From sequence record PQ287642.1: DNA of 64,000 bases; one strand, 5' to 3'. The position numbers were made by a program, and so were the translations under genes. Positions 434 through 63,272 of the stretch are shown here, in pieces (position 1 is the first letter of the stretch; the number at the start of each line of letters is the position of its first letter). A model generated the notes under the pieces. That model was given only the letters and a program-made list of their open reading frames with translations. It made no database searches and was not told the origin of the DNA.

Positions 434-451
434 GGGGAGCCGAAGCTCCCC
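434..451 (-). terminator. Intrinsic terminator, cUUCGg hairpin
   Basis: GGGGAGC-TTCG-GCTCCCC on minus strand followed by TTTATGT, just after the NAMPT-like stop. Confidence 0.85.
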
Positions 452-458
452 ATGTCTA

Positions 459-2225
459 TTACAGAGAGGTCGCAATCCGTTCCCGGATTTTTGCCATCGT
501 GTCGTTCTTGTAGAATTCACCATTCTTAAAGAACAGCTTCAATTCGCCGGATTCTGTCTCCAGAGTCGCCCAAGACATGTCGGCTTCTTGTTCAAGAACG
601 AAGTTACCTTCTTCATCTTTAATTACACGAAGGAAACCTTTTGCAGACTTCTTACTAGATGCAGCTTTTGGATCTTTATACAGCTCTACGAATTCCTCTT
701 CGATCTGAACAGCAGTGGCTTTAACGGCCATACCGAACGTATCGCGAGTGTTGTACTGATAGGTGTAGCTACCAATACCGAGAACGACGTTACTAGAGGC
801 GTAGCCTTTACGTTCCAAGCGAGACATGATCTGCTCGGTACGTTCTACAGTAATCGAATCGCCATAGATCAGGCCAACATATTCGTTCAGGCATTTGAAG
901 CCTTTACCGTTAACAGTACCGCCAAAGGAATCCCACAGGACTTCAATCGCACCACGTACTTCAACTTCCGGGATAGTCTTTTCAGACAGGAAATCGGAGA
1001 GCGACGAAGCAATGTGATTGATCTCGTAGTATTCGCCTGCGATACGTACAACTTCGTAGCCACTGAACTCAATGGACCCCAGTTCACCGATGTGCTTCTC
1101 GAAATCAGCGCGATCTGCAAACTCAGTCGGGTAAGCCATGTAGCCAGTAATAACTTTAACCGGATCACCGGAGTCAGGACGAACAACAACCCTGGCAAGG
1201 CCAAGTTCATTCTTCAGACGACTTTCGATTTCTGCACGGATGCTCGGGAGAACATCAGAGATAACACCCCAGAAGTCGAAGGAATCACAGACCAGCGAGA
1301 TGATGCCTTCCGGAACTTTCTGAAGAATGATCTCCAGAATGTAGTCACGTTCAGCTTCCAGTCGCAGTTTGTCATGCAGTTCCGGAGTGATCACAGTACC
1401 TTCCTCTTTGAGGAAGTTGATCTTCATTTGCAAACGGTACAGGATGTTGGTAGTGGCTACAGCGTGTTCGGTTGCAGTAACCGAAGCACCCAACAGTTCA
1501 GTATCGCTATTAGCACCGTAATACATCTCAGCGTAATCAAGTGCCGGGATGGTATCAGTACCAGCGAAGCTAGTCAGGTGAGCCGAGCCAGAACGCATTG
1601 CATCTTCAGGGCCACTCATACCACGGAAGCTGAAATCATGTGCTTGGAACTTAACGTGCTCACGGTTATCGCAAGTACGGTCAGCATAATGGTTCAATAC
1701 ACGTTGGTATTCAGCAGCGATGGTTGCGTTGCAAATCATTTTCCAGTTGTACGAACTAACGATGGTTTCCAGATAGTTCACCAGCCAGTAATGATCATCG
1801 TCATCCAGACTGTTGTAAACTACGAAAGTTGGAACACCAATGTTAACACGTTCACCTTCATCAATAGCCAGTACAGTCAGAGGCAGGTAACCCAGTTCAT
1901 GTAGTTTGTACAGACACTCGTGTTTGATAACGCCTTTACCGCACATGTTGTCGAAACGACGTGCAGCGCGTTTAACAGCGATTTCACGAGGCAGATTGAA
2001 GAAGGTACGATCCCACAGTTCTACCAGTTCGTGCCAAGTACCTTGCAACCCGAAGTTAACGACTTTGTTATCGTAGAACGCAGAGCAAGACTTCGACCGC
2101 AGGAACTGCTTAGCAGAGCGCGGGGTGAAGTTAGCATATTTACGTTCAGTACCTTTCGGGTACAGAGCACCATGACCGGGTTTGTAGCAGTCAGTAGCAG
2201 TTGCAGCATAGAGAGCATTAGACAT
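459..2225 (-). CDS. nadV: NAMPT-like enzyme, probably NARP1 nicotinamide ADPR-transferase (Namat)
   Basis: Motifs TDCYKPGH, HDFSFRG, SFAGTDT, ATEHAV, SLVCDSFD, VVVRPDSGDP, LIYGDSIT, GIGSYTYQ; start moved to ATG 2225 (GAGG RBS). Confidence 0.9.
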   Translation of the reverse strand: MSNALYAATATDCYKPGHGALYPKGTERKYANFTPRSAKQFLRSKSCSAFYDNKVVNFGLQGTWHELVELWDRTFFNLPREIAVKRAARRFDNMCGKGVIKHECLYKLHELGYLPLTVLAIDEGERVNIGVPTFVVYNSLDDDDHYWLVNYLETIVSSYNWKMICNATIAAEYQRVLNHYADRTCDNREHVKFQAHDFSFRGMSGPEDAMRSGSAHLTSFAGTDTIPALDYAEMYYGANSDTELLGASVTATEHAVATTNILYRLQMKINFLKEEGTVITPELHDKLRLEAERDYILEIILQKVPEGIISLVCDSFDFWGVISDVLPSIRAEIESRLKNELGLARVVVRPDSGDPVKVITGYMAYPTEFADRADFEKHIGELGSIEFSGYEVVRIAGEYYEINHIASSLSDFLSEKTIPEVEVRGAIEVLWDSFGGTVNGKGFKCLNEYVGLIYGDSITVERTEQIMSRLERKGYASSNVVLGIGSYTYQYNTRDTFGMAVKATAVQIEEEFVELYKDPKAASSKKSAKGFLRVIKDEEGNFVLEQEADMSWATLETESGELKLFFKNGEFYKNDTMAKIRERIATSL

Positions 2226-2241
2226 ATTTTTGATCCTCGGA

Positions 2242-3129
2242 TTAGAAAACAGAATGGGAGAAGAATTTCGGGTCACGTACACCATCATGCCGATAATCAT
2301 TTACGGCGTTAGGATGATAGGTGTTAGTGGTCTGGATATAGTCGTAGTATTCGTTCAGCTCGTCGAAACCCTTGGAGAAAATACCATGGGTTACAAACAG
2401 ACCCAGTTGATCTACGATGCACTGTTCGTGGATAACCTTAGCAAGTTCAATGAACGTGCGGCCACCATCACAGATGTCATCGATAACCAACAGCTTTGCT
2501 AACCGAGGAACATCATGGGCATTCAACAAAGAAGTATGGGTGATCTTACCAGTCGACAGTTCACGGTTCTTGCAAGCGTAGAGTACACCAGCAGCGCCAA
2601 TCTCTTTTGCAATGGCTTCGATCTTTTTACGTGCACCTTCATCAGAGGCAACCAACCACCATTCTTGTGGAGTTTCCAGAAGTTGTCCTTCTACACATAC
2701 CCAGCTCTTGATAATATCAGCTTGGGTGATTTCGCGACAGTTGTTGATGAGCGGTAGCGACACATTGCTGTGCGGATCGTACAAACACACGGATGTAGCA
2801 TCCAATGCGTTGATCAAGCTAGTCATCACACTGATCGACAAAGGTTCACCTTCATCGCAAACACGATCTTGTCGTGCATACGGCAGATAACCAATAACCA
2901 GGTGCATTTCAGGACGAATACGTTGACGACGAATAGCATCGAACACCAGGAACAGTTCCATGATGTCATCGCTATTACGAAGCCAAGCATTGACTATGAA
3001 TTGTTCACCTTTCTTTCTGTGATCTTTCAGAGGGATCTTGATACCGATCTCACCGCCAGGGAATTTAAAGGGCTGACAATCGTAGTGATCTGCCAGGCCG
3101 TTACCGTGAAGCTGAGTAATTCGAATCAT
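2242..3129 (-). CDS. prs: Ribose-phosphate pyrophosphokinase-like protein, probably NARP1 ADPR-PP synthetase (Adps)
   Basis: FKFPGGE, YLPYARQDR, DPHS, VASDEGA, LVIDDICDGGRTF, THGIFSKG motifs; directly upstream of the NAMPT-like gene. Confidence 0.9.
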   Translation of the reverse strand: MIRITQLHGNGLADHYDCQPFKFPGGEIGIKIPLKDHRKKGEQFIVNAWLRNSDDIMELFLVFDAIRRQRIRPEMHLVIGYLPYARQDRVCDEGEPLSISVMTSLINALDATSVCLYDPHSNVSLPLINNCREITQADIIKSWVCVEGQLLETPQEWWLVASDEGARKKIEAIAKEIGAAGVLYACKNRELSTGKITHTSLLNAHDVPRLAKLLVIDDICDGGRTFIELAKVIHEQCIVDQLGLFVTHGIFSKGFDELNEYYDYIQTTNTYHPNAVNDYRHDGVRDPKFFSHSVF

Positions 3130-3153
3130 TTATTTTTCCTTTAGGAAAGTTAT

Positions 3154-3169
3154 GGGGACCGAAGTCCCC
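3154..3169 (-). terminator. Hairpin terminator between rtcB and prs
   Basis: GGGGAC-TTCG-GTCCCC on minus strand; weak U-tract, so readthrough is possible. Confidence 0.6.
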
Positions 3170-3176
3170 GTTCGGG

Positions 3177-4430
3177 TTAGCCCTTGACGCAAACAATCTG
3201 ACGCAGGGTGTGGACGATCTCAATGAGGTCATCCTGAGCAGCCATTACGTCTTCAATGTTCTTATAAGCCTTTGGAGTCTCGTCGATCACGTCAATGTCT
3301 TTCCGGCATTCTACACCGGCAGTATCACGAGCGTGGTCAGCAAGAGTGAAAGTCTTAGCGGCTTGGGTTCGGGACATGACACGTCCTGCTCCGTGCGAAC
3401 ACGAACAGAAGGACTCGCGGTTCCCTTTACCTTTCACGATGAAGCTCTTCGCGCCCATCGATCCAGGAATAACGCCCAGCATACCCTCATCTGCACGCAC
3501 TGCGCCTTTACGAGTTACGGATACTTTCGCACCGAAGTGGTTCTCGAAGGAGACGTAGTTATGGTGACATTGCACAGCTGATAAGCTGGTATTGATTGGT
3601 CGACCCATGTAATCTGCAACTGCCTCGATAGTGGCGCGCATCATGATCGTACGGTTGAGCGTGGCATAACGCTGAGCCCAATGTACAGCTTCGATGTAGT
3701 CGCTGTAGTACTTGGTACCTTCCGGTAGATAAGCGAGGTCCTGATCAGGCAGGTTGATGTGGTAGAGCCGCATCTCCTCTTTTGCTTTCTCAATGAAGTA
3801 CCGACCGATTGCGTTACCGATCCCACGCGAACCCGAATGGAGCATGATCCAAACTCGATCTTGTTCATCCAGACAGATCTCTACGAAGTGGTTACCAGTG
3901 CCGAGGGTACCAGCATGGTTGAATGCACGGTTAGCAGCCTTACCCAGTTTCGGGTGTTTAGCCACGATGAGCTTCAGTTCCTCTTCAAGCTTCTTAACCT
4001 GAGCTTGGAGCTCCGGTTCGAGTTTCTTGTAAACGAGGTTGAAGTCACTCCATGTACCACGGTCATTCGGGCCACCATTGTCAGTACGACCATGGGGGAT
4101 ACGGGATTCTATTTTATAACGAAGATGTTGCAGACCATGAGTCATGTCGTTAGCTGTCAGATCAGTAAGCTGGCATGCAATCCCGCACCCAATATCGACC
4201 CCTACCGCAGACGGAATGATTGCACCCCGCGTAGCGATTACGGAACCGATGGTTGCACCGGTACCAAGGTGGACATCAGGCATTACAGCCAAATGCTTGT
4301 AAATGAACGGGAGTCCCGCGATGTTCTTCAGCTGACGTTTTGCATCAGCTTCAACAGGGACGCCTTTAACCCAAGCTTTAATTGGGAATTCATTTTGTTC
4401 GTTCAGCATAACGTATTTTTGAGTAGTCAT
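3177..4430 (-). CDS. rtcB: RtcB RNA 3'-phosphate/5'-OH ligase
   Basis: MPDVHLG, GVDIGCG, GTLGTGNHFVE, LHSGSRG, CHHNY, RKGA, IPGSMG, SCSHGAGR, DETPKAYK motifs. Confidence 0.97.
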   Translation of the reverse strand: MTTQKYVMLNEQNEFPIKAWVKGVPVEADAKRQLKNIAGLPFIYKHLAVMPDVHLGTGATIGSVIATRGAIIPSAVGVDIGCGIACQLTDLTANDMTHGLQHLRYKIESRIPHGRTDNGGPNDRGTWSDFNLVYKKLEPELQAQVKKLEEELKLIVAKHPKLGKAANRAFNHAGTLGTGNHFVEICLDEQDRVWIMLHSGSRGIGNAIGRYFIEKAKEEMRLYHINLPDQDLAYLPEGTKYYSDYIEAVHWAQRYATLNRTIMMRATIEAVADYMGRPINTSLSAVQCHHNYVSFENHFGAKVSVTRKGAVRADEGMLGVIPGSMGAKSFIVKGKGNRESFCSCSHGAGRVMSRTQAAKTFTLADHARDTAGVECRKDIDVIDETPKAYKNIEDVMAAQDDLIEIVHTLRQIVCVKG

Positions 4431-4569: not shown

Positions 4570-5151
4570 TCAGTCCGATTCAACGGCCATGGATAACTCT
4601 TTATGTTTCCTTCGTCTTTCAATATCAGCAAACCATGGTCTTACACTTAACCATATTGCAGGCCAACTGAGAATAGCCGCTACAGCCATCCACACTGCAC
4701 TGAGTAGCACCCATGCGTCGTTACCATCGTCAACATCTCGTGGAGCTATGTCGAGTTGATAGTCAGTTCCAACGGGGACATGGTGATAAGTGTAATCACC
4801 TAGCTTAGTTTCGTATACGAAGGGGACACCTTTCATCTTCCCTTCCCAACGACCCATTAGCTCTGTGTAGATCCCATGTTTGTATTTGTGGGTCTCTTCC
4901 CATTTCCAGGTCAATACAACCTGGGTCTTACGTTTGGTTACGTAGTCAGAGAAGAATGAGTTGTAGACTGCACCACCCATAAATGCTAAGCAGATTAGGT
5001 AGAGCACCACACAACGCAGTTTAACCCACTTGGAGATTGGTACATACGGCTCTTGTTTCATAGTCATCGTACAGCCGATTGCGTTTGCATAACCCAAGGG
5101 ATTCCTTGATGCCATTGCATTTATTGCGGCTGCCTCCAGAGTTATACTCAT
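4570..5151 (-). CDS. Hypothetical membrane protein with two predicted TM helices
   Basis: Hydrophobic stretches CVVLYLICLAFMGGAVY and AWVLLSAVWMAVAAILSWPAIWL. Confidence 0.75.
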   Translation of the reverse strand: MSITLEAAAINAMASRNPLGYANAIGCTMTMKQEPYVPISKWVKLRCVVLYLICLAFMGGAVYNSFFSDYVTKRKTQVVLTWKWEETHKYKHGIYTELMGRWEGKMKGVPFVYETKLGDYTYHHVPVGTDYQLDIAPRDVDDGNDAWVLLSAVWMAVAAILSWPAIWLSVRPWFADIERRRKHKELSMAVESD

Positions 5152-5975
5152 TTAGGATTCTCATGGATAAGCTGGAACGTGTCGAACTTGTATTGATCAA
5201 CGAAGTGCCACGCGAGTTCACTCAGCTTAAAGATATCCGGACGTTCGTATTTACCGAAGTCGGGTTTCTCTTTAGCCAAATGGAAATCGATGAAACGGTC
5301 CAATACAGGGCAACGATCGATCAAGTCTTGTTCAGTGGAACCTACCTTACAGTTGACCAGTTCCTGAATACGTTTGTACAAGGTGGGATCAGACAGAATC
5401 GGTAGGAGTTCATAGAATACCATCGGTGGATGTTCACGACTAGTCTCAACCCACAATGCTGCTAACAGTGGACGGAGAGCATAGAAGTATTTCTTCATGC
5501 GGACTTTCTCATCCGACAGCCAACGCATCTTGGTTTGCTTGGCCATGGAGATATAGTGCATGAAGCTCGATTCGGGAATGAAGTGCTTGATAGCGTAATC
5601 ACGAATCAGTTTGTAATCCCATTCGTTCTTACGGTAAACGATCGGGGAGTTCAACCACTCCAACAGAGTCGGGTTAGACTTGTAAGCCAGTTGAAGTGTC
5701 TTGGTGATACTCCAACCAGCCAGATCGAGTTCCTTGGAAACCATCTCTTCGATGGTGTCACGACCTTCGTTATCAACCCGGACATAATGACTCGGATGGT
5801 TAACGTAGATGAAGCGAACATCGTAGTCACTATTAGTAGAAGCGAAACCCCAACCACGACTACCGGACTCACAGGCGTAAATGATCTTTACACCATACTT
5901 CTGTTCGATACGAGTTAACTCGGCGTCTATAACTGCATGCATCTCATCACTAACAGGGTGACGTGGATCCATCAT
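5148..5975 (-). CDS. RlaP/YcgL-like Pol-beta-superfamily nucleotidyltransferase
   Basis: IIYACESGSRGWGFASTNSDYDVRFIY, SNPTLLEWL, KKYFYALRPLL. Confidence 0.85.
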   Translation of the reverse strand: MMDPRHPVSDEMHAVIDAELTRIEQKYGVKIIYACESGSRGWGFASTNSDYDVRFIYVNHPSHYVRVDNEGRDTIEEMVSKELDLAGWSITKTLQLAYKSNPTLLEWLNSPIVYRKNEWDYKLIRDYAIKHFIPESSFMHYISMAKQTKMRWLSDEKVRMKKYFYALRPLLAALWVETSREHPPMVFYELLPILSDPTLYKRIQELVNCKVGSTEQDLIDRCPVLDRFIDFHLAKEKPDFGKYERPDIFKLSELAWHFVDQYKFDTFQLIHENPK

Positions 5976-17049: not shown

Positions 17050-19639
<2,590 letters not shown>

Positions 19640-23992: not shown

Positions 23993-24010
23993 GGGGAGCC
24001 GAAGCTCCCC
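23993..24010 (-). terminator. Intrinsic terminator
   Basis: GGGGAGC-TTCG-GCTCCCC followed by TTTTTATTTC. Confidence 0.85.
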
Positions 24011-27004: not shown

Positions 27005-27421
27005 TTAAGCTTCATTTTTGGAACGGCTATAATGTACAGTACGAAGCATACCGTAGACTCGACCATTAGCCATGTCTAATTTACCATTACAAAAACGATC
27101 TTTCTTGATTTCCCAGCCAATGCCCTGAAGAAACTTAGCCACAGCTGCACTACGTGATACGCCAGCCTCGCAGTGAACGATTAACGTTTCGCCATCCGGA
27201 ATCTTATCGATGAATGTAAGAATCTTATCAGCATGCACGTAATCGAACATATGATAGCGGTTATCGACGTAATCTTCGACATCATCGAAAACAAGAACCA
27301 ATACAGCTTTGTGTTCGCGTACAAATTTTACGTCTTGTTCGGGACAGCGAATAGAAATAATGTAGCTTTCGTCAGTCAATGCCTGTGCAGCTAACCGTGA
27401 ATAGAATTTTACTCTCCTCAT
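27005..27421 (-). CDS. Cys-based protein tyrosine/dual-specificity phosphatase
   Basis: P-loop LIVHCEAGVSRS (HC-x5-R) and upstream FDD acid loop. Confidence 0.85.
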   Translation of the reverse strand: MRRVKFYSRLAAQALTDESYIISIRCPEQDVKFVREHKAVLVLVFDDVEDYVDNRYHMFDYVHADKILTFIDKIPDGETLIVHCEAGVSRSAAVAKFLQGIGWEIKKDRFCNGKLDMANGRVYGMLRTVHYSRSKNEA

Positions 27422-61565: not shown

Positions 61566-63272
61566 ATGTTTAATCCCGAAACTCTGGACGCTGTTCGCGA
61601 TGCAGCTCAAGCATTCACTGAACAGGAACGTGTTCTGACAATTCCGAACCCCGAGTTCCCTCTAGCTGTATATGCTGACGGTTTCAACTGTGAAACCGAA
61701 GGTAATAAAGTTGCAATGTCCGATGAACTGGCTGCTTCCGTTGAAGCTCATTTCGTCGAAAGTAACGTTGAAGCACCCGAGAACGTTAATGAAGAACGTG
61801 AAGCGATCATCAGCAATATGCATACCGCTATTGCCAAGATTCAATTCAATACTCAAAACGTTATCATTCCGGCTATTAAAGCAATGGCCACTGACTATGC
61901 CTCCCGTCAGAACGTAAGTTCTCAAGCGGATTGCGATGTCAGCACTTTCAACTACGACCCGATTCATAACGATCCTCGTCTAGTTAACCACATCCAAACT
62001 CGCTATGCTAAAGTGCGTCCTCTACCGGAATATCGTACCTTTATGCTTCGCCCGGTTGATGCTGCTACCATCATCGAGATGGTATCCATCAATAACCCAC
62101 ACCTGGATCAAGAGCAAGTTACTGAATGGGCTCTTAAGATTCCGGCACAACGGGTAGAAAACGTTTGGAGTGAACTATTTGGTACTGCACGTGGTTTGAC
62201 TGTTTCTAACCTGAGCTTTATCAATCCTAATGCTTTCCCGTTTAATCTTGATGAACTGACTCTAGCTTATTTCATCTGTGGTCATTACATCGAGAACCCA
62301 CAAGAAGTACCTGGTGAATCCGTAACATCGGAAGAATGGGAACAAACGGTTCGTCTACTCCACGAGATGCTTGGTTTCTACATCATCCGTGCGTATGAGA
62401 ATCGTCTTGAAATGCGAGAGTCTAATACTCTTGTACTTCGTTATGAAGCTCATCGCCCAGTTGAAAACCGTCGTGTACTTGTTACTCTTAACGGTGACGT
62501 TGCTGAGAGCTGGCTCGTTAAAGGTGGTTCTGTTGAAGCTCTGCTTGGTGCAGCTATTGATGGCGGTAATGTCGTACATGCACAGGGCATTGACGCACGT
62601 GCTGATCATTACATCAAACGCTGGACCGCTACATATCCGCTAATCAAACAAGCAGCACTCGACTACGCTGAGAGCCGTCGTCGGCAGGACGTTATTGATA
62701 CCTTCCTCGCACACTGTGGTGAAGGTCCTTTACGTGAAATGAATATCGGTAACGTACGTGAACTACTGGCTACCGCCATGCGTTTCGTTCGGCGCGAAGA
62801 TCTTGATAATCCATACTGCGTATTCAGTAATCTTATCTGCCGTACTTACTACACCGAACCGATGTATAAGCTGTATCTCGATACTATCGATGAATATGGC
62901 CAAAACTTCCCCGGTGCAGAACTACGTGAATTGAATACTCAAGCTCTGATTTCGCTGATTGCTATTTTCCAAGCACAGCAGATCAAAGTAGAAACATTCA
63001 ATCCTGATGTTGATCCGAATGCAACTCTTCCTGAACCAGAAGAAGTGCCAGAGGAAATCACTGAACCAACTAGTGAAGAAGTTGCCGATGCTGTCGGCGA
63101 TGCAGTAGAAGGTGAAGGTCCCCTGGCTGAAACTCCGGAAGTAGAAGACGAAGAAGATCCTTACGCTGATGAAACTCCTACTGAATCTGAGACTGAAGAA
63201 GTCGAAGAAGAGCAGGAAGAAGCCAGTGAAGAAGAAACTGAGTCTGAAACTGAAGAAGAAGAACAAGCATAA
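61566..63272 (+). CDS. Head/ejection protein with Glu-rich C-terminal tail (phiKZ gp177 position)
   Basis: AGGAG RBS; C-terminal ~85 aa strongly acidic with many xxE sites; synteny. Confidence 0.6.
   Translation: MFNPETLDAVRDAAQAFTEQERVLTIPNPEFPLAVYADGFNCETEGNKVAMSDELAASVEAHFVESNVEAPENVNEEREAIISNMHTAIAKIQFNTQNVIIPAIKAMATDYASRQNVSSQADCDVSTFNYDPIHNDPRLVNHIQTRYAKVRPLPEYRTFMLRPVDAATIIEMVSINNPHLDQEQVTEWALKIPAQRVENVWSELFGTARGLTVSNLSFINPNAFPFNLDELTLAYFICGHYIENPQEVPGESVTSEEWEQTVRLLHEMLGFYIIRAYENRLEMRESNTLVLRYEAHRPVENRRVLVTLNGDVAESWLVKGGSVEALLGAAIDGGNVVHAQGIDARADHYIKRWTATYPLIKQAALDYAESRRRQDVIDTFLAHCGEGPLREMNIGNVRELLATAMRFVRREDLDNPYCVFSNLICRTYYTEPMYKLYLDTIDEYGQNFPGAELRELNTQALISLIAIFQAQQIKVETFNPDVDPNATLPEPEEVPEEITEPTSEEVADAVGDAVEGEGPLAETPEVEDEEDPYADETPTESETEEVEEEQEEASEEETESETEEEEQA

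What the first reader, a model, noticed from the sequence alone, without database searches (positions are those of the whole stretch)
459..3129. NARP1-type NAD+ reconstitution pair
Seen: adjacent PRPS-like and NAMPT-like genes, with no NMNAT in the window. Established: the NARP1 pathway (Adps makes ADPR-PP; Namat joins it to nicotinamide) rebuilds NAD+ destroyed by Thoeris, DSR, SIR2-HerA and SEFIR defences, and its genes look like prs plus nadV. Inference: this pair is NARP1 rather than ordinary salvage, complementing the Tad1-like sponge as a second layer against NADase immunity.
Basis: partly seen in the sequence, partly recalled or inferred. Interest (0 to 1): 0.7.

Follow-up and report, generated by a model that had tools for sequence, protein, structure and literature searches.

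The report
Phage NARP1 NAD+ rebuilding gene pair
Two adjacent genes of a Pseudomonas jumbo phage match the published NARP1 enzymes Adps and Namat, which rebuild NAD+ from the fragments left by bacterial NAD+-destroying defences; this is real but ordinary, because the same genes in sister isolates are already in the catalogue of the paper that discovered NARP1.

Summary
On the minus strand lie a 295-aa PRPS-like gene (2242..3129) and a NAMPT-like gene (459..2225, 588 aa; the 613-aa ORF to 2300 is over-extended).

The window is Pseudomonas phage HHBS36_1, a nucleus-forming Pawinskivirus. Every sequence test places the pair in NARP1 rather than PRPP/NMN salvage:
- **Namat-like:** it matches the solved SPbetaL1 Namat at E 1e-102, against 1e-44 for human NAMPT. 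It carries the published Namat signature (GSYTYQYNTRD).
- **Adps-like:** it fails all NCBIfam PRPS cut-offs and carries the Adps-type loop DDICDGGRTF.
- **Trees and profiles:** both split the pair cleanly from Prs and from NARP2 Nampts.
- **Gene order:** 76 of 79 related viral loci show the same adps-then-namat order.
- **Other routes:** no NMNAT or NadR homologue exists anywhere in the 302-kb genome.

It is not new. Osterman et al. 2024 already list the PS119XW and PA1C orthologues as Adps and "Adps-associated" Namat.

One caveat is new. This isolate alone has Ser162 where Pro is invariant in 93 homologues and 6 sister isolates. The residue sits next to a substrate-pocket Asp, so Adps activity here is uncertain.

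The "Tad1-like sponge" clause found no support. Enzyme activity is inferred, not shown.

The parts
2242..3129 (-). adps: 295-aa PRPS-fold protein, predicted ADP-ribose pyrophosphokinase (ADPR + ATP -> ADPR-PP + AMP)
   Evidence: It is 35% identical to the ICP1 and Bas63 Adps. It scores 97 bits against the 113-bit cut-off of TIGR01251. It scores 317 bits against an Adps-clade profile and 50 bits against a Prs profile.
459..2225 (-). namat: 588-aa NAMPT-fold protein, predicted nicotinamide ADP-ribose transferase (ADPR-PP + nicotinamide -> NAD+ + PPi)
   Evidence: E 1e-102 to PDB 9W5W/9W5X (SPbetaL1 Namat) against 1e-44 to human NAMPT. 38% identical over its full length to Bas63 Namat. 709 bits against a Namat-clade profile and 269 bits against a NARP2 Nampt profile.
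741..773 (-). Codons for Namat residues 485-495, GSYTYQYNTRD: the selectivity-clamp helix (SCH) signature GS-X-Phi-X-Phi-X-Phi-TRD, with aromatic residues at motif positions 3 and 7
   Evidence: The motif is defined in PMC12774641 and located here. NARP2 Nampts have GG-GLLQ..RD in the same columns.
2452..2481 (-). Codons for Adps residues 217-226, DDICDGGRTF: the Adps-type PP loop (donor-site loop)
   Evidence: In viral Adps homologues I, C, G222 and F226 are invariant (70/70). Prs has DDM[VI]DT[AG]GTL. The sequence is identical to Bas63 Adps. The loop's role is described in PMC13586617.
2644..2646 (-). Adps codon 162, TCT (Ser): a private substitution at an otherwise invariant Pro, directly before Asp163 (= ICP1 Asp161)
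   Evidence: Pro in 70/70 viral Adps and 23/23 Prs. CCT (Pro) in BRkr, phiLBG22, phiHQ, PS119XW, PA1C and HPP-Temi.
3154..3169 (-). GC-rich hairpin with a TTCG loop (GGGGAC TTCG GTCCCC) between the rtcB stop and the adps ribosome-binding site
434..451 (-). GC-rich hairpin with a TTCG loop (GGGGAGC TTCG GCTCCCC) followed by TTTAT, 7 nt after the namat stop; terminator-like
3137..3141 (-). Ribosome-binding site AAGGA upstream of the adps ATG (3129)
   Evidence: read directly from the sequence.
2234..2238 (-). Ribosome-binding site GAGGA upstream of the namat ATG (2225); the adps stop TAA is at 2242-2244
   Evidence: conserved in six sister isolates.

Best explanation
The two genes are the NARP1 operon (adps then namat) of a nucleus-forming Pseudomonas aeruginosa jumbo phage, Pawinskivirus PS119XW species, isolate HHBS36_1.

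How it works:
- Namat then joins ADPR-PP to nicotinamide and regenerates NAD+ in one step, without NMN and without an adenylyltransferase.

Basis of each step:
- Shown elsewhere, not here: the chemistry (SPbetaL1, ICP1) and the counter-defence phenotype (Bas63, Fado, SPbetaL1).
- Shown here from sequence: family membership, the catalytic and specificity motifs, the operon anatomy, and the absence of any NMNAT.
- Inferred: that these particular proteins are active and protect this phage. The private Ser162 in Adps makes full activity in this isolate uncertain.
For: Namat:
- Best solved-structure hits are 9W5W/9W5X (SPbetaL1 Namat) at E 1e-102, against about 1e-44 for human NAMPT.
- In that alignment the SPbetaL1 residues D13, Y15, F189, S190, R192, D215, A242, the catalytic His, R306, D308, G360, D361, G390, S391, Y396, T398, R399 and D400 are all conserved. 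F392 is Tyr here and A362 is Ser.
- The SCH signature GSYTYQYNTRD is present. NARP2 Nampts have GG-GLLQ there.
- The clamp loop (SCL) reads SAKQF, with Lys at position 3 as in Bas63 and 31/60 viral Namats.

Adps:
- It falls below every NCBIfam PRPS cut-off.
- It is 35% identical to ICP1 Adps (active in vitro) and to Bas63 Adps (validated in vivo).
- ICP1 R87, H121, D161, K185, D212, D213 and D216 are conserved, as are I214, C215 and F221.
- It has the Adps state in every column that separates 70 viral Adps from 23 Prs.

Trees and profiles:
- The Prs versus Adps split and the NARP2 Nampt versus Adps-adjacent Namat split both have SH-aLRT 100, with the window proteins on the NARP1 side.
- Profile scores are 317 vs 50 bits for Adps and 709 vs 269 bits for Namat.

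Context:
- 77/79 related viral loci have a Namat homologue on the same strand within the flank. In 76 it lies downstream of adps, as here; the 77th is a single ORF that hits both queries.
- No NMNAT or NadR homologue exists in the whole genome.
- The PS119XW and PA1C orthologues are listed as NARP1 in Osterman et al. 2024, Tables S1/S2.
Against: - No biochemical or genetic test exists for this phage or its genus that I could find.
- Adps residue 162 is Ser where Pro is invariant in 93 homologues and 6 sister isolates, next to Asp163. Substituting the equivalent ICP1 Asp161 with alanine lowers activity. Adps may therefore be weakened or dead in HHBS36_1.
- Two ICP1 adenine-contact residues, F92 and F223, are not conserved here (Cys, Glu). 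They are not conserved in Bas63 Adps either.
- SCL position 4 is Gln rather than a stacking residue. A Phe follows at position 5, and the stacking geometry could not be tested.
- Namat enzymes retain PRPP-dependent NMN synthesis in vitro, so sequence alone cannot exclude some NMN output.
Confidence: 0.85

Rival explanations
1. The genes are NARP1 by descent, but in this isolate Adps is crippled by Pro162Ser. HHBS36_1 would then have a weak or non-functional NARP1. Namat alone could at most make NMN from host PRPP, with the host finishing NAD+ synthesis.
For: Ser162 (TCT) is unique to this isolate. Pro (CCT) is found in 6/6 sister isolates, 70/70 viral Adps and 23/23 Prs, adjacent to a substrate-pocket Asp whose substitution lowers activity. 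Namat retains PRPP/NMN activity in vitro.
Against: Both reading frames are intact, and every other catalytic residue and all regulatory signals are conserved. The effect of a Pro-to-Ser change at this position has not been measured in any Adps or Prs that I found. It could also be a sequencing error in the record.
Confidence: 0.2
2. Ordinary salvage: a phage Prs makes PRPP and a phage NadV makes NMN, which host enzymes convert to NAD+ (the pre-2024 annotation, and the one in GenBank).
For: Pfam, PHROG and GenBank names say so. The NAMPT-like protein passes NCBIfam NF006629 (443 bits vs 405).
Against: The PRPS-like protein fails all NCBIfam PRPS cut-offs. It has lost the basic RF-loop run, reading R-V-C-D-E-G-E where Prs has R-R-x-R-S-A-R, and it has the Adps-type PP loop. 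The Namat signature is present and the Nampt-type GG-GLLQ is absent. Clade and profile tests both favour NARP1. These same names were shown to be wrong for Bas63.
Confidence: 0.04
3. The pair works as NARP1 chemistry, but its main role is metabolic housekeeping rather than counter-defence. It would keep NAD+ available for the phage's own NAD+-dependent DNA ligase and for a long jumbo-phage infection cycle.
For: The phage encodes a LigA-type NAD+-dependent DNA ligase at 17050..19143. NARP2 raised NAD+ even without a defence system in the published work.
Against: ADPR and nicotinamide accumulate mainly when an NADase acts. In Bas63, Fado and SPbetaL1 the phenotype of the pair is specifically escape from NAD+-depleting defences. 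The two roles are not mutually exclusive.
Confidence: 0.1

Closest known systems
NARP1 of Pseudomonas phages vB_PaeM_PS119XW (MN103543_00276/00277) and PA1C (MK599315_00291/00292), as listed in Osterman et al. 2024, Tables S1/S2
   Same: These are orthologues. The region is 98.3% (PS119XW) and 89.5% (PA1C) identical in DNA. PS119XW Adps differs by one residue and Namat by five. Gene order, ribosome-binding sites and flanking hairpins are the same.
   Different: Only this isolate has Ser162 in Adps. The GenBank record of this isolate over-extends namat by 25 codons.
NARP1 of Escherichia phage Bas63 (JohannRWettstein, genes 79-80), validated in vivo
   Same: Same order, adps then namat. Adps is 35% identical with an identical DDICDGGRTF loop. 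Namat is 38% identical over its full length, including the two long insertions that make both proteins about 590 aa. SCL has Lys at position 3, and the SCH reads GSYTYQY(N/M)TRD.
   Different: Different phage family and host. SCL position 4 is Trp in Bas63 and Gln here, followed by Phe.
SPbetaL1 Namat (PDB 9W5W, 9W5X) and Vibrio phage ICP1 Adps (structures described in PMC13586617)
   Same: All catalytic and most ligand-contact residues are conserved.
   Different: SPbetaL1 Namat is about 100 aa shorter and uses Arg40 as the SCL stacking residue. ICP1 Adps has the loop CDGAAS, plus F92 and F223, which are not shared here.
NARP2 (KVP40-type Nampt plus Nmnat)
   Same: The Nampt fold and the nicotinamide-binding catalytic core.
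   Different: No NMNAT in this genome. NARP2 Nampts form a separate clade (SH-aLRT 100) and lack the SCH aromatic motif. In Moby, phiN3 and fHe-Yen9-04 the NMNAT sits beside the Nampt.
NARP1-AP (Adps-Adpp-Namat of Vibrio phage Gary)
   Same: The core Adps and Namat genes.
   Different: No Macro-domain phosphatase lies within the flanking genes or among 47 small window ORFs by Pfam. By the published logic, this phage would be expected to remain sensitive to aRES-type defence.
Bacterial Prs (ribose-phosphate diphosphokinase) and NadV/NAMPT
   Same: The folds and the shared catalytic residues (ARxDR, DxH, PD.G, K.R, DD..D).
   Different: See the membership table. The Adps-like protein scores below all PRPS family cut-offs and the loops differ.

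Membership tests
Namat (NARP1 nicotinamide ADP-ribose transferase) | Closer in sequence to experimentally characterised Namat than to NAMPT | tested here: met
   phmmer against PDB: 9W5W/9W5X at 1e-102 against human NAMPT at about 1e-44. 38% identity over full length to Bas63 Namat. Profile scores 709 vs 269 bits.
Namat (NARP1 nicotinamide ADP-ribose transferase) | SCH signature GS-X-Phi1-X-Phi2-X-Phi3-TRD, with aromatic X at motif positions 3 and 7 (PMC12774641) | tested here: met
   GSYTYQYNTRD at residues 485-495. Seven NARP2 Nampts show GG-GLLQ..RD in these columns.
Namat (NARP1 nicotinamide ADP-ribose transferase) | SCL loop supplying an adenine-stacking residue (third residue Arg, Lys or Tyr; if Lys or Tyr, the next residue stacks) | tested here: inconclusive
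   The loop reads TPR-S-A-K-Q-F. Lys at position 3 fits (31/60 viral Namats). Position 4 is Gln, and Phe follows at position 5 (F/Y in 30/60). Stacking geometry cannot be read from sequence.
Namat (NARP1 nicotinamide ADP-ribose transferase) | Intact Nampt-like catalytic core (SPbetaL1 F189, D215, catalytic His, R306, D308) | tested here: met
   All are conserved in the alignment; residue roles come.
Namat (NARP1 nicotinamide ADP-ribose transferase) | Falls in the Adps-associated clade, separate from the Nmnat-associated Nampt clade (Osterman 2024, Fig. 4A) | tested here: met
   Split with SH-aLRT 100 between 7 NARP2 Nampts and 71 Adps-adjacent proteins plus the window protein. The PS119XW orthologue is labelled 'Adps-associated' in Table S2.
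Namat (NARP1 nicotinamide ADP-ribose transferase) | Prefers ADPR-PP over PRPP and makes NAD+ directly | not testable with these tools
   Needs an enzyme assay.
Adps (NARP1 ADP-ribose pyrophosphokinase) | Member of the phage Adps clade, separate from cellular Prs (Osterman 2024, Fig. 3C) | tested here: met
   23 proteobacterial Prs form one side of a branch (SH-aLRT 100). The window protein lies on the other side with ICP1 Adps, Bas63 Adps and 68 viral homologues. Profile scores 317 vs 50 bits. It falls below all NCBIfam PRPS cut-offs. Caveat: the Prs outgroup is proteobacterial only.
Adps (NARP1 ADP-ribose pyrophosphokinase) | Namat gene in the immediate vicinity (97% of the Adps clade) | tested here: met
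   namat starts 16 nt after the adps stop. 77/79 related viral loci have a Namat homologue on the same strand within the flank, downstream of adps in 76. None of 80 bacterial prs loci has one.
Adps (NARP1 ADP-ribose pyrophosphokinase) | Remodelled, family-conserved PP loop for the ATP donor (PMC13586617) | tested here: met
   DDICDGGRTF. In viral Adps I, C, G and F are 70/70, against Prs DDM[VI]DT[AG]GTL.
Adps (NARP1 ADP-ribose pyrophosphokinase) | Catalytic and acceptor residues (ICP1 R87, H121, D161, K185, D212, D213, D216) | tested here: met
   All are conserved. However, the invariant Pro before the D161 equivalent is Ser in this isolate only.
Adps (NARP1 ADP-ribose pyrophosphokinase) | Loss of canonical PRPS allosteric elements (RF-loop basic residues) | tested here: met
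   Prs has R-R-x-R-S-A-R where the window has R-V-C-D-E-G-E, as do most viral Adps. The loss of the C-terminal alpha11-alpha12 region was judged only from the shorter C-terminus.
Adps (NARP1 ADP-ribose pyrophosphokinase) | Converts ADPR + ATP to ADPR-PP + AMP | not testable with these tools
   Needs LC-MS on purified protein.
NARP2 | Nampt accompanied by an NMN adenylyltransferase in the same genome (94% of cases) | tested here: not met
   No NMNAT is annotated in 420 CDS. The best tblastn/HMM E with NadM-Nudix, NadD and NadR queries was 0.12.
NARP3 | PnuC-like transporter plus NadR-like enzyme | tested here: not met
   No NadR homologue in the genome (phmmer best E 0.24). PnuC was not searched separately.
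NARP1-AP | Macro-domain ADPR-1''-phosphate phosphatase (Adpp) within two genes of the operon | tested here: not met
   hmmscan found no Pfam Macro family in the flanking genes or in 47 small window ORFs. The published screen used HHpred, which is more sensitive.
Canonical Prs (ribose-phosphate diphosphokinase) | Reaches curated family score thresholds | tested here: not met
   TIGR01251: 97.2 bits against a cut-off of 113. Equivalog models: 36-85 bits against cut-offs of 296-536.

The most novel reading that the evidence does not exclude
HHBS36_1 is a natural NARP1 hypomorph. A single private Pro162Ser change, at a position invariant across Adps and Prs, weakens or abolishes ADPR pyrophosphorylation. 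This isolate and its near-identical siblings (one residue apart in Adps) would then form a ready-made isogenic-like pair for measuring what NARP1 contributes to a nucleus-forming jumbo phage on NADase-armed Pseudomonas hosts.

A weaker add-on: the two conserved TTCG hairpins that bracket exactly these two genes mark a discrete, separately regulated or separately acquired cassette.
Probability: 0.2. Interest if true: 0.35.

Novelty: already known. Interest (0 to 1): 0.2.

Why it matters
NAD+ depletion is one of the few bacterial defences that a phage nucleus cannot shield against, because it starves the whole cell. A nucleus-forming jumbo phage carrying NARP1, plus its own NAD+-dependent DNA ligase, fits the idea that such phages still need metabolic counter-defences.

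For annotation, GenBank still calls these genes prs and nadV, while the published NARP1 catalogue already covers the species.

For phage-therapy candidates against P. aeruginosa, it is useful to know whether a given isolate's NARP1 is intact. Here that turns on Ser162.

Nothing here changes what is known about the pathway.

Tried and rejected
1. **NMNAT elsewhere (NARP2) or NadR (NARP3).** I fetched the whole genome and searched it; nothing was found.
2. **Macro-domain Adpp (NARP1-AP) or RyR-type partner next to the operon.** Pfam found nothing in the flanking genes or in 47 small ORFs. RyDEP was not searched with a dedicated model.
3. **Tad1/Tad2 sponge in the window.** No DUF2829 hit (the Tad2 family, from my own knowledge) and nothing else suggestive. 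No Tad1 model was on hand, and the anti-defence columns of the one relevant supplementary table were cut off.
4. **A functional RtcB-NARP1 link (an 'anti-abortive-infection island').**
   - RtcB lies within 3.5 kb of adps in 5/80 Adps-selected viral loci.
   - Only 3/43 RtcB-selected loci carry NARP1 within 6 kb, all from 310-325 kb contigs.
   - The adjacency is therefore lineage synteny, not a general association.
5. **Sigma-70 promoter scan.** There were fewer hits than in shuffles, and it is uninformative for a phage with its own RNA polymerases.
6. **The 438-aa plus-strand ORF 588..1904.** It is antisense to namat with a TTG start; I did not search it and treat it as a shadow of the namat frame.
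7. **Structure prediction.** I did not run it. The tools return no coordinates, so clamp geometry and the effect of Ser162 could not be read. Sequence hits to solved Namat structures were already decisive.
Full report
**What is there**

The span 459-3129 holds two minus-strand ORFs: 2242..3129 (295 aa) and 459..2300 (613 aa).
- The first hits the N-terminal PRPS domain in Pfam and phrog_619 'ribose-phosphate pyrophosphokinase' at 8.7e-79.
- The second hits NAPRTase/NAMPT_N and phrog_448 'nicotinamide phosphoribosyl transferase' at 2.2e-175.

The window is 100% identical to Pseudomonas phage HHBS36_1 (PQ287642.1, 302,096 bp), record positions 62001-126000. Seven further records from six sister isolates (BRkr, phiLBG22, PS119XW in two records, phiHQ, PA1C, HPP-Temi) share the region at 89-99% identity. 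These phages belong to the genus Pawinskivirus. The genome encodes a nuclear shell protein, PhuZ tubulin and split RNA polymerase subunits, so it is a nucleus-forming jumbo phage.

**Anatomy**

Reading the minus strand in order:
- The rtcB stop (3177) is followed by a hairpin GGGGAC-TTCG-GTCCCC (3154-3169).
- Then come a ribosome-binding site AAGGA and the adps ATG at 3129.
- adps ends with TAA at 2242-2244.
- Then come GAGGA (2234-2238) and an ATG at 2225. This is the true namat start.
- Evidence for that start: four sister records annotate 588 aa, and the sequence in the Osterman table begins at the same Met. The 613-aa ORF, which overlaps adps by 59 nt, is an over-extension.
- Seven bases after the namat stop lies a second hairpin, GGGGAGC-TTCG-GCTCCCC, followed by TTTAT (434-451).

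This hairpin type occurs only three times in the 64-kb window, against 0.01 expected. Two of the three bracket exactly this gene pair. Both are conserved in all six sister isolates, including the 89%-identical PA1C and HPP-Temi. I read the pair as a two-gene unit. Whether the hairpins are terminators, RNA-stability elements or cassette boundaries is not shown.

**Is the NAMPT-like protein a Namat?**

- Against all PDB sequences the best hits are 9W5W and 9W5X (E 1e-102). The depositors' paper identifies these as SPbetaL1 Namat bound to NAD+ and nicotinamide. Human NAMPT scores about 1e-44.
- In that alignment every residue the paper names for nicotinamide, ribose-phosphate and adenine contact is conserved. 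The exceptions are F392 (Tyr here, still aromatic), A362 (Ser; a backbone contact) and the loop residue R40 (Lys here, as in Bas63).
- The paper's diagnostic signature for Namat against Nampt is GS-X-Phi-X-Phi-X-Phi-TRD, with aromatic residues at motif positions 3 and 7. It is present as GSYTYQYNTRD.
- Seven NARP2-type phage Nampts (KVP40, VH7D, P-KP2, Moby, phiN3, fHe-Yen9-04, IME13) read GG-GLLQ..RD in the same columns.
- The variable clamp loop reads TPR-SAKQF. Lys at position 3 is the commonest state among 60 viral Namats. Position 4 is Gln rather than a stacking residue, and a Phe follows. I score this feature inconclusive.
- The protein is 38% identical to Bas63 Namat over its full length, including the two insertions that make both about 590 aa.
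- In a tree of 79 proteins, the NARP2 Nampts and the Adps-adjacent proteins separate with SH-aLRT 100, and the window protein sits among the latter.

**Is the PRPS-like protein an Adps?**

- It falls below every NCBIfam PRPS threshold (97 bits against 113 for TIGR01251; equivalog models far lower).
- It is 35% identical to ICP1 Adps, whose ADPR pyrophosphorylation was shown by LC-MS and structures, and 35% identical to Bas63 Adps.
- The residues the structural paper names (ICP1 R87, H121, D161, K185, D212, D213, D216, plus I214, C215, F221) are conserved. F92 and F223 are not, but they are not conserved in Bas63 either.
- In an alignment of 70 viral Adps-like proteins and 23 proteobacterial Prs, a set of columns cleanly separates the two groups. 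The window protein has the Adps state in all of them:

| Adps state | Prs state |
|---|---|
| Y-x-P-Y-A-R | Y-F-G-Y-A-R |
| DR-V-C-x-x-G-E | DR-R-x-R-S-A-R |
| DPHS | DLHA |
| G-A-x-K-K | G-G-V-V-R |
| T-G-x-I | A-N |
| DDICDGGRTF | DDM[VI]DT[AG]GTL |
| L-x-V-T-H-G-I-F-S-K-G | A-Y-x-T-H-P-x-x-S |

- The tree puts all Prs on one side of a branch (SH-aLRT 100). The window protein, ICP1, Bas63 and the viral homologues lie on the other.
- Profiles built without the test sequences score the window Adps at 317 bits (Adps clade) against 50 (Prs), and the window Namat at 709 against 269.
- The validated Bas63 and ICP1 proteins behave the same way, and E. coli Prs and KVP40 Nampt behave the opposite way.
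- Caveats: the viral training set was chosen by similarity to the window protein; the Prs outgroup is proteobacterial only; and the KVP40 control has a 97%-identical relative in its training set.

**Context**

- Of 79 IMG/VR loci with an Adps homologue, 77 have a Namat homologue on the same strand within the flank. In 76 it lies downstream of adps, as here; in the 77th a single ORF hits both queries. None of 80 bacterial prs loci has one.
- NARP2 Nampts in Moby, phiN3 and fHe-Yen9-04 sit beside an NMN adenylyltransferase.
- In HHBS36_1 none of the 420 annotated products is an NMNAT.
- Searches of all six frames with NadM-Nudix, NadD and NadR queries found nothing (best E 0.12). It also excludes the NadR half of NARP3.
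- No Macro-domain phosphatase of the NARP1-AP type is detectable nearby.

**Mechanism**

By homology:
- Adps transfers the beta,gamma-pyrophosphate of ATP to the distal ribose of ADP-ribose, giving ADPR-PP and AMP.
- Namat couples ADPR-PP with nicotinamide to give NAD+.

The substrates are the products of NADase defence effectors. Published deletions and knock-ins show escape from SIR2-HerA, DSR2 and type I Thoeris. The paper's abstract also names DSR1 and SEFIR among the defences overcome. None of this has been tested for a Pawinskivirus. The phage's own LigA-type NAD+-dependent DNA ligase (17050..19143) gives it a direct stake in the NAD+ pool.

**The one thing that is not routine**

Adps codon 162 is TCT (Ser). 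Pro occupies this column in 70/70 viral Adps and 23/23 Prs. All six sister isolates have CCT, and PS119XW Adps differs from the window protein at this residue only. The residue directly precedes Asp163, the equivalent of ICP1 Asp161, whose alanine substitution lowered ADPR-PP formation. It may be a weakening mutation, a tolerated variant or a record error. I cannot tell which.

**Novelty**

Osterman et al. 2024 list these entries:
- MN103543_00276 (PS119XW) and MK599315_00291 (PA1C) in Table S1 (Adps homologues). The PS119XW row ends in 'Yes', which I read as the column for Namat in the vicinity.
- MN103543_00277 and MK599315_00292 in Table S2, labelled 'Adps-associated'.

The pair is therefore already catalogued as NARP1 at species level. 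GenBank product names simply have not caught up.

**Side claims and dead ends**

- The 'Tad1-like sponge' clause found no support in a Pfam scan of 47 small ORFs, but no Tad1 model was available.
- The striking neighbours are RtcB, an RlaP-family nucleotidyltransferase and an RNA ligase. They suggested an anti-abortive-infection island. However, only 3 of 43 RtcB-selected viral loci carry NARP1 nearby, all on 310-325 kb contigs. The adjacency is lineage synteny.

**Verdict**

The activity is inferred, and the finding is already known. Interest is low. The private Ser162 is the only point worth a bench test.

Noticed in passing
window 2644-2646 (-), Adps codon 162: Ser (TCT) where Pro (CCT) is invariant in 93 homologues and all six sister isolates. 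The residue is next to a substrate-pocket Asp. This could be a weakening mutation or a record error.
   Followed up: yes
window 434-451, 3154-3169, 23993-24010 (all minus strand): Three GGGG..TTCG..CCCC hairpins in 64 kb, against 0.01 expected. Two bracket the adps-namat pair exactly. The third, identical to the first, lies between the QueC-like gene and the small ORF upstream of it. The two that bracket the pair are conserved in the sister isolates. Their role is unknown: terminator, RNA-stability element or cassette boundary.
   Followed up: partly
window 2226-2300 (-), and the gene just left of 459: The GenBank record of HHBS36_1 (and of HPP-Temi) over-extends namat by 25 codons into adps. 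The next gene downstream (record 61971-62453) is annotated from a start that lies inside the hairpin, whereas sister records annotate it as 132 aa starting about 90 nt after namat.
   Followed up: partly
window 3177-4430 (-), 5148-5975 (-); L004:10411-11805 (-), just left of the window: An RNA-repair set surrounds the pair: RtcB ligase (Pfam 1e-128), an RlaP-family nucleotidyltransferase (1e-88), and an RNA ligase with a PHA02142 OB domain. The adjacency to NARP1 recurs only in related jumbo-phage contigs.
   Followed up: yes
window 17050-19143 (-): A LigA-type NAD+-dependent DNA ligase with all domains (adenylation, OB, HhH, BRCT). It is a phage-encoded consumer of NAD+.
   Followed up: partly
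window 27005-27421 (-): A 138-aa ORF with an HCX5R(S) motif (VHCEAGVSRS) and a sub-threshold Pfam DSPc hit (1.7e-5; 25 bits against a 33.5-bit cut-off). It may be a small dual-specificity-type phosphatase; its substrate is unknown.
   Followed up: partly
L001:3856-5175 (Vibrio phage ICP1 isolate 2017_Dha_AD): The ICP1 Namat partner is annotated as a 439-aa 'hypothetical protein' starting at a Val, so it lacks the N-terminal ~50 residues that carry the D13/Y15 equivalents. Its signature reads GSYTYQYVTCD, with Cys in place of the Arg of TRD.
   Followed up: no
phrog_12872; L163:3618-4751: One PHROG profile of 547 positions matches the Adps-like protein with its first 230 positions and the Namat-like protein with its last 280. 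In L163 a single ORF hits both queries. Natural Adps-Namat fusions or truncations may exist.
   Followed up: no
window 588-1904 (+): A 438-aa TTG-start ORF lies antisense to namat. I did not search it and treat it as a frame shadow.
   Followed up: no
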